From contig JANHCV010000001.1 of NCBI GenBank assembly GCA_025594325.1, forward strand, positions 3,720,001-3,784,000: a stretch of DNA of 64,000 nucleotides, given 5' to 3'. This DNA is from Blastocladiella emersonii ATCC 22665 (lineage: Eukaryota; Fungi; Blastocladiomycota). The translations under genes and the position numbers were made by a program. Shown piece by piece: positions 50,966-56,670 of this stretch (the first letter of the stretch is position 1; each line of letters starts with the position of its first letter). The notes under the pieces were generated by a model. That model worked only from the letters and a program-made list of their open reading frames with translations, was not told where the DNA came from and searched no databases.

Positions 50966-53900
50966 TCAGGCCACGCTCTGCATGCTCTTCTTGACCATGG
51001 CCGCGTTCGACCCCGCGATAGTGGACCCGTCGGACGCGTGGATGTTGGTGCTCCCCGCCCGCCCGCGGCCCTCGTCGCCCTCAAAAACGGCGCCCGAGAC
51101 GGCCACGGCATCTATACACACCGTTCGAGTCAGCTCTGCACACATCCTTCGTTCTCTCGCCTTTACGTACCCTCATGGTCGACGGCGGCCTCGTTCTGGC
51201 GGCAGATGCCAAGGAGCCACCCATACCACTGCGCAAACACCTTGTCCTGGCGCGTGCGCACCCAGTAGCTCTGCCCGTGCATCTCGAGCTCGAAGCAGTT
51301 GCGCAGCAGGTGCGACAGGTTGCGCACCCGGCAGTGCGTCAGGAACAGCAGCTCGGCCTCGACCGGCTACAGCGCGATGGCCACGGTCAGTCGAACACTC
51401 GCGATCGTGACTGCGACCTCAAACGTACCACGGGCGCCTTGGAAATCGCCAAATGCCCCGTGAGCGGGTACAGGTGCAGCCACTGCTGCTTGAACGCGGT
51501 GCGCATCGCGCGCGGCGACCGCACGTAGAAGAGCTCGCGCTGCGGCTCGCTCGGCACGTAGACCCCGCCAATGATGGCCGCCGGCGACTCCTCGTCCACC
51601 TCCATGAGCGCATCGGGCCGCCGCGACGTCGTCACGTCGCCCGTCGTCGGGAGGACCGTCAGCCCCGGCGCGTCGGGCGACGGCTCGTTGCTGCCCTGCC
51701 GCACGCGCGAGACGGCCGAGGCTACGAGCGAGCGCATCGTCGTGGCGACGGTCGCCGCTGCGGGGGACTCGGAGGAGTCGGAGGCCGTCGCGGCGGCCGT
51801 GAGCCGCGTGGTCGAGGTCGGCGATGCGATCGAGGTCGGCGACGACGGCACTGAGACGTAGTCCGCGGAGGCGGCCAGCGCGGGACGGCTCCCGCCGGCC
51901 TGGGCCGCGGCGAGGGCTGAGCTCATGTTGCCGCCGTGGCGCGTTGACGACATGGACGTGGTGCGGATCTTGCCGGTACTGCCTCCGACCATGGTCCCGC
52001 GGCTCATGGACACGGACCCGGCGCTGGACCCGATCTCGGTGAACGACTCGCCCTGGCGGGTCAGGCGGCGCGACATCATGACCTGTTTCGTCATGAGGCT
52101 CTGGGACTCGCGGCGTGAGGACTCGTGGTTCCTGGACGACCGCGAGTGGCGCGAGAAGCCCGTGCCGCGGTTGTTGAGCGCCTCCATGTTGTTGAGGTCG
52201 GGCCGGAAGATCGCAATGTACGCCTTGGAGTAGAAGAGCAGGAACGTGACGGCGAGGTTGATGGTGCACACGGCGGCGACCTTGATCGCGTACGCGAGCA
52301 CGGGGCCCGTCGTCGGCATCATGAGCAGCGGGATCGCCACGCCCGCGACCAGCGTCATCGTGTACACGGCGATCCCGATCGTCTTGCTCTCGCGGTACGC
52401 GCTCTGCGCGCCGCGCGTGCGGATCGCGAGGTACACGGACAGCAGCAGGAGCGCCGCGTTGTACGCGACCAGCAGGATCATGAACACGCCGCCGCTCCCG
52501 CCTGACCGCGCCGCACTGCCGCACGTCCAGTACCGGTAAGTTGGCGTGTCGATGATGACGGGGACCGCCGCGTCCATGACCGTCCACAGCACGAGCAGGA
52601 CCACCTCGCCGAGGAGCGCCGCCAGCGAGTACTTGACCATGTCGCGGTCCGCGAGCCCGATCAGCCGGCCCTTGCGCGACCCGCCGAAGATGAACATGAT
52701 CCGCAGGTTCTTGGTCATCAGGTTGCCGAGCACCATGGCGACCGACAGCCCAATCACCCACGACTGCGCCGAGCACGTTGCGCTCGTCGGGATCCCCGTC
52801 GACAGCGGCAGGATCAGGTAGCCGAGCAGCAGACCCGAGCTGATTAGCATGCCGAAAAAGTAGGACGAGGACCGGACGACGGGCGTTGCGCGGTAGTGCG
52901 TCAGCACGGCCATGATCAGGACCTAAAGCAGCTGCGCGTAAGAACATGGGCCTGGTACGACGCTCGCATCGACCGTACCGTCGTGAGCACGCAGATGGCA
53001 AAGATGACCTGGACCGCAATCCCGAGCGGCGAGTCGAACGTGACGACGAGCTTGGGCGCGTTGACGACCACGGACGTGGCCCACTGCAGCGCCGCCGACG
53101 AGCGGATGACCTGCGTCGTGTTAGCCATGTTGAACGAGGTCGCGGACGCGGACAGCGCCGAGTTGGCCGCAAAGTACTCGGCCACCTTGCGCGCGACCGG
53201 GTCGAGCGCCGCGAGCTCGAGGTACTGGCCCTTGGCGTCCTGGATCGAGACGCTGGCGCGCACCGACATTGCGTCCGTGTCGGCGACCAGGCGGCGGAGT
53301 ACCGGCGTCCCGAGGCCCAGCGAGGCGACGGCGGCCATGACCTGGTCGCCGATCGCGCGCATCAGGTCAGCGCTCACACCACCGCTGCTGCCCGTCGATG
53401 CCACCGCCGCCACCGCGGCCGTGTCGCCCTCCATGTGGATGTGGCCGGGCGCGAGGATCGGGATATCGAACTCGGTCGGGTCTTCGCCGAGCGACGCGGT
53501 AGCGGTGCGCGGGGCGGGGATCTCGCCACGCGCAGCCGCGACCAGGGCTCCCGTCGCGCCAAAGCTCGACGCGACCGTCGACTCAGTCCCGACGATCCGG
53601 AAATGCATCTCGATAGCGTCATTGAACCCCTCGCGGAGCGCGCAGTCGACGCCCTCGAATCCGGCGGCGCACGTACACTGGTCGTTGGCGACGCACGTGC
53701 CCTGGCCCTCGATGCAACCCTTGCTGCACACGGGGAGCTGGCACACGCTGAGGTTGGTTGGGCCGGCGGCGAGCGCAGCCGCGGTGTCGCCCGTCGCGAC
53801 GGCGCCAGCTCCAGTCGCGGCAACAGTGGACCCCGCGACGTACGGCTGCTCGATGCGTGGCGCCGTGCACCGCGACACGACGACGGTCGTCGTCACGTTG

Positions 53901-56670
53901 AAGACGGAGCTCGGGTACAGGTCGGTCAGCGACATGATGCCGAGCGTGTAGGTCCCGGGCGCGCCGACGAAGCGCAGGCCCTGGAACGGGACCGAGGCCC
54001 CGAGGATGGCCTTGGACGCCTCGCCGGTCACGACGGCGGGGACCACCGCAGAGTCACTCGCTGCGCCGCCCGCAACTCCCAAAACCTGCGCCTGCAGGAG
54101 GAACGTCTCGTCGGCGGTCGTCCGCGCGACCTGGTCGTACTGGTCGAGCGCCGCGACCTGGACGCTCGGCAGGGCGTCGCCCGAGTACAGACTGACGGAC
54201 TGGGGCATCTCGGCCGCCGAACCCTCGTCCTGCGTGACGAGCGCGCGGAGCCGGCGCGGCTGCGACGCGTAGTTGTCGCCCTGGCCCAGCGCCGCGCGGT
54301 TGTCGGCGAACGTGTTGGTGGCCATGTCGATGCGCTGCGTCGCCGAATACACGTACACGGCGCCGCCGCGCTGCGCGACGTTGCCCGTGAACCGGTTTCC
54401 GGCGATGGTCGCGGACAGGCTCGTCGCCGGCGACAGGTAGATGGCACCGCCGTCAGTCCCTGCCGTGTTGTTGCTGAACGTCGACTTGGCCACGTTGATC
54501 GCGCTCCCCGAGTTGGCGAGCGGCGAGTACAGGATCGACCCGCCGCGCGTCGCGCCCGAGTTGCCCGTGAACTCGGTGTCGGTGATGCTCGCGTTACCCT
54601 TGAGCCAGAGCACGGACGCCGTCGCGGGCGCCTTGCTGCCCTCGACGACCGAGCCGGCCATGGTCAGCGCGGTGCCGTCCATGGCGTGGACCGCGACGCC
54701 CTCGTTGCCGGTGAGCCGCGACCGCGTGATGGTGTTAGTCGCGGCCGTGTTGGCAAACGCGATCAGGTTGGCCACCTTGTTCTTGACAAACTGCGAGCCG
54801 TCGATGACGAAGGCCGCGTTGGCCACGGTGCCCATGGTGTAGACGAGGCGGTCGGTCGAGGCCATGGTCGGCATCGCGTTGTTGGCGAACACCGAGTCGG
54901 TGATCCGCAGCGACTGGCCGTACGTCTGGACGAGGCCGCCGGCGGCCGGCACGTTTCCTGAAAACGAGGAAAGAGTGAGATGGATCGGCGCGAGAGAGGT
55001 GCGAGGCTCGTACCGTCAAAGGTGACGCGCGTGAGGTTCAGGAACGAATTGCGGTCGGCGACGACCATGTAGCTGCCTGCGCGGTTGTTGAAGAAGGTGA
55101 CGTTGCTGAGCTCGCTCTGCAGGCCCTGGCCGATGTAGAAGGCACTCGAGGTACCGAACGCGTTGTCTACATCGTGACGCGCACTGTCAGTGGGAGCGCT
55201 CGCGATGCTGGTTGGGCGGGAGGGTGGTGTACCGCGGACGATAGTGTTGCTCAGCCGCAGCGACGACGATACGTAGGAACCGACGATCCATCCGAGCGCA
55301 TTGTCTACGCCGAGTTGTTCGTCAGCATCGACGCTCGATCGCGCTGCAAACAGGGCAACGTACTCGAGAAGACCGAATAGTCGAACGAGAGCTTGGCCGT
55401 CTCGCTGAGCTGGAACAGGCGTGGTGTGCCGCGGTGGTTCCGGATCGCGCACCGGGTGAAGTTGGCCGTGGACGATCCCGCGACACGGAACGACATGATC
55501 GAGGTGCCGTTGTTGTTGGAGAAGACCGAGTCGGTGAAGGTGCCCTGCGCGTTAAGCAGGGTCATGATCCCCGTCTGGCCGCCGTAGTTACCTGTGACCG
55601 CGAGTTAGCCTGAGCGTGCTGAAGCGAGCGCAGGGACGTACCGTTCACGTTGCAGCGGACCATGTTCACCGACGCGCCCGACACGAGGAAGAGGTTGGCG
55701 AGCCCCGAGACGACGGGCGACGTGTTGCCGACAAAGTTGGTGTCCATGAACGTCGCGGTCGCCTGGTCCTGCACGACAAACGGCATATTGCGGTTGCCTG
55801 CGCGAGCATTAAGGTCAGATACATCCGGTGCTCGTCAAAGACGGTGCGCAACGTACTCGAGACGATACAGTTGGTCATGAGCGTGGTCGAGGTGCCCGCG
55901 AGCGTAAAGTGGAACGAGCGCCACGGCCGGAGACTCGATATGAGCGAGTCGGACACGCGCAGCGTCGCCGACTCAGTGATACCGAGCTCCAGACTCATGG
56001 CGAGCGGCTGGTCCGACACGATGGCGGTTTGGGCGAGCCGGACGGTCGAGGTCCCTCGGGCGGACACCGTAAACGTGGCGCCGGTCACACCGCCGTCGCG
56101 CACAACGGCCTCACTGAGCGTCAGCCCAGACCCGCCGTTCAGGTCAAACACGGCCCACGAGGACGCGGACGTCGGCGCGGCAAAGCCCTGCAGCGTCATG
56201 CCCTGGAACTGCAGCGTGACGGGACCGAGCAGCTGCACGAGCGGCGCCGACACGACATCGGCGAGCGCCGTGGACGAGGGCGAGATGGTGACGGCCGAGA
56301 ACGCGGTCGCGGTGCTTGGCGGTGCGCCTGCGGGAGCCGCCGTGTAGCCGCTGCGAGGGACATGCGTGATAGTGAACGGCTGCGTCGCAGCGGTCGCGTT
56401 CAGCCGCGCCGGGCGCGTGACGTCCAGGAGGTGGACGCCGTCGAGCAGCTGCAGCGTCGCATTCTGGCCGAGCGGGACGAGCGAGGCCCACGCATCGGAG
56501 AGGGTGGCGAAGTTGGCGGTTCGGTCGTTGCCGACAGTATACGTCGTCGCAGCGAGTGCCTGGGCGACCAGCGTGAGCGTGAGGACAAACAGAAGCGCCG
56601 CGAAGGACGCCGTTCCCGGGCTGCTTGGTCGGCGGCCGAGGTTGCGGCTACCCGCCATGTTCAGATGCAT
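50966..56670 (-). CDS. Class C (GABA-B-like) GPCR with beta-helix (Pmp/pectin-lyase-like) and EGF-like ectodomain and a C-terminal PH-like domain
   Basis: Signal/TM N-terminus; FxxN...GGAIY repeats; EGF-like CSKGCIEGQGTCVANDQCTCAAGFEGVDC; 7TM with YRATPVVRSSS, TKNLRIMFIF, AYRESKTIGIAVY; two further exons at about 51370-51170 and 51115-50966. Confidence 0.8.

What the first reader, a model, noticed from the sequence alone, without database searches (positions are those of the whole stretch)
50966..51560. PH-like domain spliced onto the cytoplasmic tail of a class C GPCR
Seen: the 7TM ORF does not end at 51387. A GTACGT donor near 51428 and a TGTAG acceptor near 51370 join GVYVPSEPQRELFYVRSPRAMRTAFKQQWLHLYPLTGHLAISKAPV to PVEAELLFLTHCRVRNLSHLLRNCFELEMHGQSYWVRTRQDKVFAQWYGWLLGICRQ, followed by a final exon. 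The strand pattern and terminal helix with a Trp match a PH fold. The supplied ORF track does not show this join. Inference: a receptor with a built-in phosphoinositide- or G-beta-gamma-binding module, which canonical class C GPCRs do not carry.
Basis: partly seen in the sequence, partly recalled or inferred. Interest (0 to 1): 0.75.

Follow-up and report, generated by a model that had tools for sequence, protein, structure and literature searches.

The report
PH domain on fungal GPCR tail
A taste-receptor-type (class C) cell-surface receptor of the water mould-like fungus Blastocladiella emersonii really does end in a spliced, pleckstrin-homology (PH) domain, and the same tail module turns out to be common in class C receptors of early-diverging fungi although it is almost never annotated.

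Summary
On the minus strand, two short introns continue the 7tm_3 reading frame: 51428..51367 (62 nt) and 51170..51112 (59 nt). Both have GTACGT donors, a CTGAC branch site and a YAG acceptor. The frame runs to a stop at 50966. GC3 is 0.94 in both downstream exons against 0.53-0.60 in the introns.

The joins are already in the public model KAI9189991.1 (H9P43_001424, Blastocladiella emersonii, 1717 aa, 'hypothetical protein').

Intron 1 sits at the same phase-0 position in orthologues from Allomyces, Sorochytrium and Paraphysoderma. It lies inside the domain (β3-β4 loop), not at its edge.

An AlphaFold2 model of the Paraphysoderma orthologue gives the tail domain pLDDT 82-93, with seven strands and a C-terminal helix. 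Its best PDB matches are all PH domains (VIA Z 13.4; Foldseek TM 0.75).

New here: the tail is not unique. At least 28 of the 150 closest 7tm_3 proteins carry a related C-terminal PH-like domain. They come from Blastocladiomycota (including two B. emersonii paralogues), Chytridiomycota, Rozella, Mortierellomycota and Endogonales. The papers I searched describe only N-terminal domains.

Ligand is untested. The canonical phosphoinositide motif K-Xn-(K/R)-X-R is incomplete.

The joined B. emersonii exons were not folded.

The parts
52976..56658 (-). Exons 1-5 of H9P43_001424: signal peptide, right-handed beta-helix / PMP repeats, EGF-like module and TM1 start. This is the ectodomain and is covered by another finding.
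   Evidence: Mapping of P0001 onto the window. Pfam Beta_helix 1.7e-17, Chlam_PMP and EGF_PEAR1L on P0001. Exon borders from the greedy mapping are approximate.
52923..52975 (-). Short intron within TM1 (GTACGG...CTTAC...TTTAG).
   Evidence: Sequence read. Frame change between ORFs 52916..54952 and 51387..52913.
52224..52922 (-). Class C (7tm_3) seven-helix domain. It is most similar to the GABA-B, mGlu and CaSR transmembrane domains.
   Evidence: Pfam PF00003: 1.2e-35 on the exon and 1e-39 on P0001 residues 1086-1339. The 7TM of a relative models onto GABA-B/mGlu structures with Z 28.
51537..52223 (-). Ser/Thr/Ala-rich cytoplasmic linker of ~190-230 aa, unstructured in the orthologue's model.
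   Evidence: pLDDT below 50 for the equivalent stretch in the P0005 model. Linker lengths 182-194 aa in the three full-length orthologues.
51684..51707 (-). Conserved RxRxGSN[DE] motif (RVRQGSNE), a basophilic AGC-kinase-type consensus site, 57 aa before the PH domain.
   Evidence: Present in all four orthologues, 41-57 aa upstream of the domain. Kinase and phosphorylation are inferred only.
51429..51536 (-). N-terminal third of the PH domain (β1-β3; ELFYVRS...HLAISKAPV), at the end of the 7TM exon.
   Evidence: Homologous to P0005 355-392, which is modelled as β1-β3.
51367..51428 (-). Intron 1: 62 nt, phase 0, GTACGT...CTGAC...TAG. It lies in the β3-β4 loop of the PH domain. Its position is conserved in four Blastocladiomycota.
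51196..51366 (-). C-terminal two thirds of the PH domain: β4-β7 and the C-terminal helix carrying the invariant F..W (FAQW).
   Evidence: Invariant residues across orthologues: C, R.R (β5), C, RT (β7), F..W, C.
51171..51195 (-). Start of the acidic post-PH extension (end of exon 2).
51112..51170 (-). Intron 2: 59 nt, phase 1, GTACGT...CTGAC...TATAG. It was not present in the one orthologue checked (Sorochytrium). If retained, the protein ends three codons later with the PH domain intact.
50966..51111 (-). Exon 3: a 47-aa non-conserved C-terminal extension plus the TGA stop.
   Evidence: GC3 0.94 in this frame. Present in P0001.

Best explanation
The gene at about 56658..50966 (minus strand) encodes a 1717-aa class C GPCR of Blastocladiella emersonii. 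It has an extracellular beta-helix/EGF domain, a 7tm_3 core, a disordered Ser/Thr-rich linker of about 190 aa and a genuine 93-105-aa PH domain.

Shown:
- A conserved phase-0 intron splits the PH domain, and splicing is needed to make it.
- The domain is conserved as a unit in the Blastocladiomycota orthologues.
- It belongs to a wider set of PH-like tails found on many class C GPCRs of early-diverging fungi. It is therefore most likely an old, functional part of these receptors and not a recent fusion.

Inferred mechanism. The domain is basic (net +4 to +7). I propose it acts in cis as a docking module that holds the receptor tail at the inner leaflet, or on a membrane-associated signalling partner.
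- The canonical 3-phosphoinositide motif is incomplete. I therefore expect low-specificity binding of anionic lipid, or binding at a non-canonical site. The invariant Arg-x-Arg of β5 and the Arg of β7 may contribute.
- The acidic stretch that follows the domain and the conserved RxRxGS site in the linker may modulate this.
- The expected effect is on localisation, desensitisation or effector access of the receptor.
For: - Splice: canonical signals, and GC3 of 0.94 in the exons against 0.53-0.60 in the introns.
- Splice: exact identity with the public model.
- Splice: the intron position and the junction peptide are conserved in four species.
- Fold: the AF2 model of orthologue P0005 has block-mean pLDDT 82-93 over residues 351-450, with seven strands plus a helix.
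- Fold: the listed top Foldseek matches are all PH domains (2p0d, E 3.8e-6, TMt 0.75), and 160 matches have E <= 1e-3.
- Fold: VIA-align against 48,161 chains gives Z 13.4 (2p0d, 100 residues, 2.8 A), followed by Osh3, ARAP3, DAPP1 and Akt PH domains.
- Fold: ESM-Atlas neighbours are PH families (0.92 and 0.89).
- Fold: Pfam PF00169 hits lie at the same place in P0003, P0020 (25.8 bits, above the gathering score), P0015, P0142, P0149, P0058, P0065 and P0148.
- Breadth: a locally iterated HMM finds 28 proteins at E < 1e-20, with no hit on reversed decoys.
- Breadth: independently aligned groups connect at 95-97% hhalign probability, and the orthologue group connects at 76% to the Blastocladiomycota paralogue group.
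- Breadth: in a plain full-length MAFFT alignment the helix Trp is nearly invariant.
- Breadth: a Mortierellomycota member models with the same 7-strand-plus-helix tail at pLDDT ~78-88.
- Charge and motifs.
Against: - There are no transcript data for B. emersonii, so splicing rests on sequence signals and comparison.
- The B. emersonii domain itself was not folded. The joined exons have no foldable reference and P0001 exceeds the 1200-aa limit. The fold is therefore inferred from an orthologue.
- Pfam does not detect PH in P0001, P0002 or P0005.
- The orthologue group links only moderately to the other fungal PH tails (hhalign 76% at best, 0.2-20% to the other groups). Independent acquisition is not excluded.
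- The tail of the Mortierellomycota model could not be fold-searched alone, because the 7TM filled both lists.
- The lipid-docking mechanism is pure inference, and most PH domains do not bind lipids specifically.
Confidence: 0.85

Rival explanations
1. The PH domain is a protein-protein module, not a lipid binder. It would bind free Gβγ (as the GRK2 PH domain does), a small GTPase, or a phosphorylated segment of the receptor's own linker. The receptor would then carry its own transducer- or feedback-docking site.
For: - The canonical phosphoinositide motif is incomplete in all four orthologues (with strand assignment).
- GRK2-Gβγ structures are among the Foldseek and VIA matches (2bcj rank 9; 7pwd Z 11.1).
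- PH domains that bind Ral, Arf and Rac are also in the list (1zc4, 2j59).
- The residues most conserved in the orthologue group (LxPxTxH in β2-β3, CRxR in β5, three Cys) are not the usual lipid-contact positions.
Against: - A shared fold says nothing about the ligand.
- GRK2 scores no better than dozens of lipid-binding PH domains.
- The domain is strongly basic (+4 to +7), which favours membrane contact.
- No partner was identified.
Confidence: 0.3
2. The PH-like tail is a structural spacer or relic with no ligand of its own, kept only for folding, trafficking or dimer packing of the receptor.
For: - Sequence conservation between groups is low (mean column identity 19% in A3).
- Most members fall below Pfam's threshold.
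Against: - The domain has been retained in at least five fungal lineages, and across about 40% identity orthologues, with 17 invariant residues including surface Arg residues.
- A conserved kinase-type site and an acidic tail accompany it.
Confidence: 0.1
3. Gene-model artefact: the receptor ends at the stop at 51387, and the downstream exons are chance ORFs or part of another transcript.
For: - No transcript evidence was examined.
- Pfam sees nothing in exon 2 or exon 3 alone.
Against: - GC3 of 0.94 in both downstream exons, in exactly the frames that the splice predicts.
- Conserved intron position and junction peptide in four species.
- Only the spliced product gives a complete, confidently modelled PH domain.
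Confidence: 0.03

Closest known systems
Canonical PH domains (Pfam PF00169), e.g. ArhGAP9, ARAP3, DAPP1, Akt1, Osh3 and pleckstrin
   Same: Seven-strand β-sandwich capped by a C-terminal helix with the signature Trp, and a basic β1-β2 region. Best structural matches have Z 12-13.4 and TM about 0.7.
   Different: - Sequence identity to the matched chains is only 6-21% in the VIA list.
- Pfam does not detect PH in the B. emersonii protein, and scores are below its gathering score in all but one relative.
- The third basic residue of K-Xn-(K/R)-X-R is Q, M, T or Y.
- The domain is attached to a 7TM receptor instead of a soluble signalling protein.
Metazoan class C GPCRs (GABA-B, mGlu, CaSR, TAS1R, GPR156/158)
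   Same: 7tm_3 core (Pfam 1e-39). A relative's 7TM superposes on GABA-B/mGlu1 structures with Z about 28.
   Different: - There is no Venus-flytrap domain; the ectodomain is beta-helix plus EGF.
- The cytoplasmic tail carries a folded PH domain. From my own knowledge, animal class C tails have coiled-coil or short linear motifs, and mGlu1/5 recruit a PH-superfamily EVH1 domain (Homer) in trans. Homer3 EVH1 appears at Z 11.2, but below about 30 true PH domains.
Class C GPCRs of anaerobic gut fungi with pectin-lyase/beta-helix and EGF ectodomains (Seppälä et al. 2016, PMC5168858)
   Same: The same unusual ectodomain design on a class C core in zoosporic fungi.
   Different: That paper describes only N-terminal domains and calls the 7TM 'carboxy-terminal'. 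It reports no tail domain.
GPCR-bigrams of oomycetes and other protists (GPCR-PIPK, -INPP, -AC, -PDE, -TKL; PMC6033456, PMC5784254)
   Same: A 7TM receptor with a folded cytoplasmic accessory domain linked to phosphoinositide or G-protein signalling.
   Different: - Bigrams are defined by catalytic C-terminal domains. The PH domain is a non-catalytic binding module.
- The receptor class differs.
GRK2/3 C-terminal PH domain
   Same: A PH domain that operates next to activated GPCRs at the membrane. It is structurally matched here (2bcj, 7pwd).
   Different: - In GRK2 the PH domain belongs to the kinase and binds Gβγ and PIP2. Here it is part of the receptor.
- No Gβγ-contact residues were tested.

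Membership tests
PH domain fold (PH-like superfamily, PH proper) | Seven-stranded antiparallel β-sandwich closed by a C-terminal α-helix | tested here: met
   Tested on the orthologue P0005, not on the window's own protein. DSSP gives 7 strands plus helix 434-454, with block-mean pLDDT 82-93. Top PDB matches are PH domains in two independent aligners.
PH domain fold (PH-like superfamily, PH proper) | Conserved Trp in the C-terminal helix | tested here: met
   F..W is invariant in the four orthologues (FAQW in the window). The Trp is at least 90% conserved in the 27-sequence full-length alignment.
PH domain fold (PH-like superfamily, PH proper) | Match to Pfam PF00169 above the gathering score (25.1 bits) | tested here: not met
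   P0001, the window exons and P0002 were scanned and gave no hit; P0005's precomputed Pfam lists 7tm_3 only. P0003 scores 15.5 bits. Only the distant relative P0020 reaches 25.8 bits.
High-affinity phosphoinositide-binding PH domains | K-Xn-(K/R)-X-R motif across β1/β2 | tested here: not met
   The basic residues at the end of β1 and at the start of β2 are present. The final Arg position is Q (B. emersonii), M, T or Y (with strands). Non-canonical lipid sites are not excluded.
High-affinity phosphoinositide-binding PH domains | Measured binding to phosphoinositides | not testable with these tools
   Needs lipid overlay, liposome flotation or SPR.
Class C GPCR (7tm_3) | 7tm_3 transmembrane domain above the Pfam threshold | tested here: met
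   137.2 bits against a cut-off of 33.5, profile positions 2-251.
Class C GPCR (7tm_3) | Venus-flytrap (ANF_receptor) ligand-binding domain and NCD3G cysteine-rich domain | tested here: not met
   Beta_helix, Chlam_PMP and EGF-like are found instead. Several fungal relatives that carry the PH tail do have ANF_receptor.
Class C GPCR (7tm_3) | G-protein coupling | not testable with these tools
GPCR-bigram | C-terminal catalytic accessory domain | tested here: not met
   The tail domain is a PH fold with no catalytic family match. Definition taken from PMC6033456.

The most novel reading that the evidence does not exclude
A C-terminal PH domain is an ancestral, so far undescribed standard module of fungal class C GPCRs. 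It was retained from Rozella and chytrids to Mortierellomycota and is absent from the animal class C receptors I know. It would let the receptor read phosphoinositide state or free Gβγ in cis. That would be a built-in feedback or desensitisation device in lineages that, as far as I recall, lack GRK-type kinases.
Probability: 0.15. Interest if true: 0.8.

Novelty: new variant of a known kind. Interest (0 to 1): 0.55.

Why it matters
Surveys of class C GPCRs in non-animal eukaryotes have catalogued only extracellular domains: Krishnan 2012, de Mendoza 2014, Seppälä 2016 and the 2025 eLife survey of close relatives of animals.

A folded PH domain on the cytoplasmic tail points to a direct physical link between receptor and inner-leaflet lipid or G-protein subunits that is not known from animal class C receptors. 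It recurs in at least five early-diverging fungal lineages and in at least three B. emersonii receptors.

It also gives a concrete handle for studying chemosensing in zoosporic fungi, which include amphibian and algal pathogens. Useful experiments are tail deletion, a GFP-tagged PH domain as a localisation probe, and lipid and Gβγ binding.

There is a practical annotation point. Pfam's thresholds miss nearly all of these domains, so the architecture is hidden from Pfam-threshold domain scans.

Tried and rejected
- Pfam on single exons found nothing for exon 2 or exon 3.
- PDB sequence search with exon 2 gave no hit at E <= 10.
- Own-genome search with exon 2 found only itself. The paralogues are too divergent for that search and appeared only through the profile work.
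- Word-index searches restricted to the tail of P0001 and of P0005 returned only the queries. They did supply the public names.
- A word-index search with P0020, meant to place the two unnamed Logan proteins, gave as nearest named relative a chytrid at 29% identity. Their taxon stays open.
- Fold searches with the 625-aa Mortierellomycota model were filled by 7TM matches and did not test its tail.
- Literature searches for 7tm_3 plus PH, class C plus PH-like, and GPCR plus pleckstrin in fungi found no description of this architecture.
- Exon-shuffling origin was rejected, because the conserved intron lies inside the domain.
- Joined step left out. The three B. emersonii exons were never joined or typed. 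The spliced product was handled only through the database protein P0001, which is too long to fold, and through orthologue P0005.
Full report
**Source and gene**

The window is G000:C1:3720001-3784000 of a 32.7-Mb, 21-contig, ~67% GC eukaryotic assembly. I confirmed this: the 7TM exon is 100% identical to KAI9189991.1, 'hypothetical protein H9P43_001424 [Blastocladiella emersonii ATCC 22665]', 1717 aa (P0001). It is a fungal contig, not human.

**Observation**

On the minus strand the 508-aa ORF 52913..51387 matches Pfam 7tm_3 (1.2e-35). It stops at 51387 only if the sequence from 51428 is read through.

- Intron 1 begins with GTACGT at 51428, contains CTGAC and ends ...GCTGTAG at 51367. It is 62 nt and phase 0.
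- Exon 2 (51366..51171) reads PVEAELLF...CRQNEAAVDHE.
- Intron 2 (51170..51112, 59 nt, phase 1) has the same GTACGT/CTGAC/YAG signals.
- Exon 3 runs to the TGA at 50966.
- A third intron of the same style interrupts TM1.

Third-position GC separates coding from non-coding sequence sharply:

| Segment | GC3 |
|---|---|
| 7TM exon | 0.94-0.96 |
| Exon 2 | 0.94 |
| Exon 3 | 0.94 |
| Intron 1 | 0.60 |
| Intron 2 | 0.53 |
| 3' flank | 0.47 |

(All.)

P0001 contains the three translations contiguously, at residues 1110-1604, 1605-1669 and 1671-1717. My mapping of P0001 on the window gives eight exons from about 56658 to 50966.

**Comparative support for the splice**

A full-library HMMER search with the 7TM exon found three proteins that align through the tail:

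| Protein | Accession | Species | Length |
|---|---|---|---|
| P0002 | KNE56728.1 | Allomyces macrogynus | 1616 aa |
| P0003 | KAL7754353.1 | Sorochytrium milnesiophthora | 3017 aa |
| P0005 | not retrieved | Paraphysoderma sedebokerense | 542-aa fragment model |

I fetched their loci (L002, L003, L004). Each has an intron at the same codon boundary: after SPQ/TPV/DPN and before PVEAD/PSNAQ/PTTAP. The introns are 72, 58 and about 99 nt long. The peptide is conserved across the junction. Intron 2 is absent in the one orthologue checked for it (Sorochytrium). If it were retained in B. emersonii, the protein would end three codons later with the domain intact.

**Fold**

The B. emersonii protein is too long for the structure tool, and the joined exons have no reference.

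- The 7TM fragment and the linker are poorly modelled.
- Residues 351-450 have block-mean pLDDT 82-93.
- They form strands 355-363, 372-379, 384-388, 398-400, 405-408, 416-420 and 426-430, followed by helix 434-454. This is the PH topology.
- The splice junction falls in the β3-β4 loop.

Structure searches agree:

- Foldseek against the PDB returned only PH domains in the listed top matches. The best is 2p0d (ArhGAP9): E 3.8e-6, TM 0.75, rmsd 2.6 A over 106 columns. There are 160 matches at E <= 1e-3.
- VIA-align against 48,161 representative chains gave Z 13.4 for 2p0d (100 residues, 2.8 A). Osh3, ARAP3, Tiam2, DAPP1, centaurin and Akt1 follow at Z 12.6-13.1.
- EVH1 and Ran-binding domains appear only at Z 11.2.

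Independent leads agree as well:

- ESM-Atlas neighbours of exon 2 (0.92), and of residues 1556-1672 of P0001 (0.89), are PH families.
- Pfam PF00169 hits P0003 at 2889-2966 (E 0.026, below threshold).

**Residues**

Across the four orthologues the invariant positions are L.P.T.H (β2-β3), P.P..A....L..CR.R (β4-β5), C (β6), RT (β7), F..W (helix) and a C eight residues after the Trp.

The domain is 93-97 aa long with net charge +4 to +7. In three of the four orthologues an acidic stretch follows it (net -5, -13 and -8 over 35 residues). An invariant RxRxGSN[DE] motif lies 41-57 residues upstream.

For the canonical phosphoinositide signature K-Xn-(K/R)-X-R, the first two basic positions are kept. 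The last is Q, M, T or Y. A canonical 3-phosphoinositide pocket is therefore not predicted. Electrostatic or non-canonical binding remains possible.

**The tail is not unique**

Scanning 30 other long-tailed 7tm_3 hits with Pfam gave PH matches in three tails:

- P0020: 25.8 bits, above the gathering score.
- P0015.
- P0142 (Thoreauomyces, a chytrid).

Profiles built locally from the tails and iterated over the 150 retrieved proteins converged on 28 proteins with E < 1e-20. There were no hits at E <= 10 on reversed decoys. In these proteins the domain normally starts 15-60 residues after TM7 and ends at the C-terminus. Only the orthologue group has the ~190-aa linker.

Named members:

- Mortierellomycota: Mortierella alpina, Haplosporangium, Modicella.
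- Endogonales: Jimgerdemannia.
- Chytridiomycota: Borealophlyctis, Polychytrium, Fimicolochytrium, Dinochytrium, two Phlyctochytrium species, Thoreauomyces.
- Rozellomycota: Rozella allomycis.
- Blastocladiomycota: Allomyces javanicus, Catenaria, and two further B. emersonii receptors, H9P43_006661 and H9P43_006426.

Further checks on this wider set:

- More weak PF00169 hits lie at the same place in P0149 (21.1 bits), P0058, P0065 and P0148.
- Independently aligned groups connect by hhalign at 95-97% probability through the mixed group.
- The orthologue group of the window gene connects best to the Blastocladiomycota paralogue group (76%, E 2.3e-5) and weakly to the others. A common origin is likely but not proven for this particular lineage.
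- A plain full-length MAFFT alignment of 27 receptors keeps the helix Trp in at least 90% of rows.
- An AF2 model of the Modicella receptor gives a well-modelled class C 7TM and a tail domain (about 441-546, pLDDT ~78-88) with strands followed by helix 526-548.
- Fold searches of that model were taken up by the 7TM (Z 28 to GABA-B/mGlu), so its tail was not tested on its own.

**Literature**

The fungal, eukaryotic and holozoan GPCR surveys I could read describe N-terminal domains only and do not mention a PH tail (PMC3251606, PMC3971589, PMC12716839).

The beta-helix/EGF class C ectodomain is already described for anaerobic gut fungi, with the 7TM called carboxy-terminal (PMC5168858).

GPCR-bigrams are defined by catalytic tails (PMC6033456).

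Full-text searches for the combination found nothing. Absence from this library is not proof of novelty.

**Verdict**

- The intron is inside the domain, not at its border.
- The join is already in the public model.
- The architecture is widespread in early-diverging fungi and not special to this receptor.

Function is inferred. I favour a cis-acting membrane or effector docking module, regulated by the acidic tail and a conserved basophilic kinase site. Protein (Gβγ or GTPase) binding is the main rival.

B. emersonii has a large class C repertoire, with 77 exon-level 7tm_3 matches. At least three of these receptors carry the tail.

Noticed in passing
window 51684-51707 (-): An invariant RxRxGSN[DE] motif (RVRQGSNE here) lies in the disordered linker, 41-57 aa before the PH domain, in all four orthologues. 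It fits a basophilic AGC-kinase (PKA/Akt-type) consensus.
   Followed up: partly
window 51040-51195 (-); P0002 and P0003 C-termini: An acidic stretch directly follows the PH helix in three of the four orthologues (net -5, -13, -8 over 35 aa), next to a domain of net +4 to +7. It may act as an autoinhibitory tail.
   Followed up: partly
P0046 (1860 aa): A class C GPCR with ANF_receptor plus 7tm_3 and a C-terminal Lipase_3 domain (E 3.5e-22). This would be a receptor-lipase fusion. The source organism was not looked up.
   Followed up: no
P0055 (1792 aa): Glycos_transf_2 plus Laminin_G_3 plus Ephrin_rec_like ahead of a 7tm_3 domain. This is either a fused gene model or an odd architecture.
   Followed up: no
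L004:1-5936: The Paraphysoderma orthologue is split into three adjacent public gene models (Beta_helix; EGF plus 7tm_3; 7tm_3 plus PH tail). The end of the last model looks like intron read-through.
   Followed up: partly
window 55165-55364 (-): The public model removes about 200 nt here. An ORF with beta-helix-like sequence runs through part of this region, so the ectodomain exon borders may need revision.
   Followed up: no
G000, whole genome: There are 77 exon-level matches to 7tm_3, which indicates a very large class C GPCR repertoire in B. emersonii.
   Followed up: partly
window 52916-56670 (-): The beta-helix/PMP plus EGF ectodomain on a class C core, the subject of another finding on this window, was already described for anaerobic gut fungi (PMC5168858).
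   Followed up: partly
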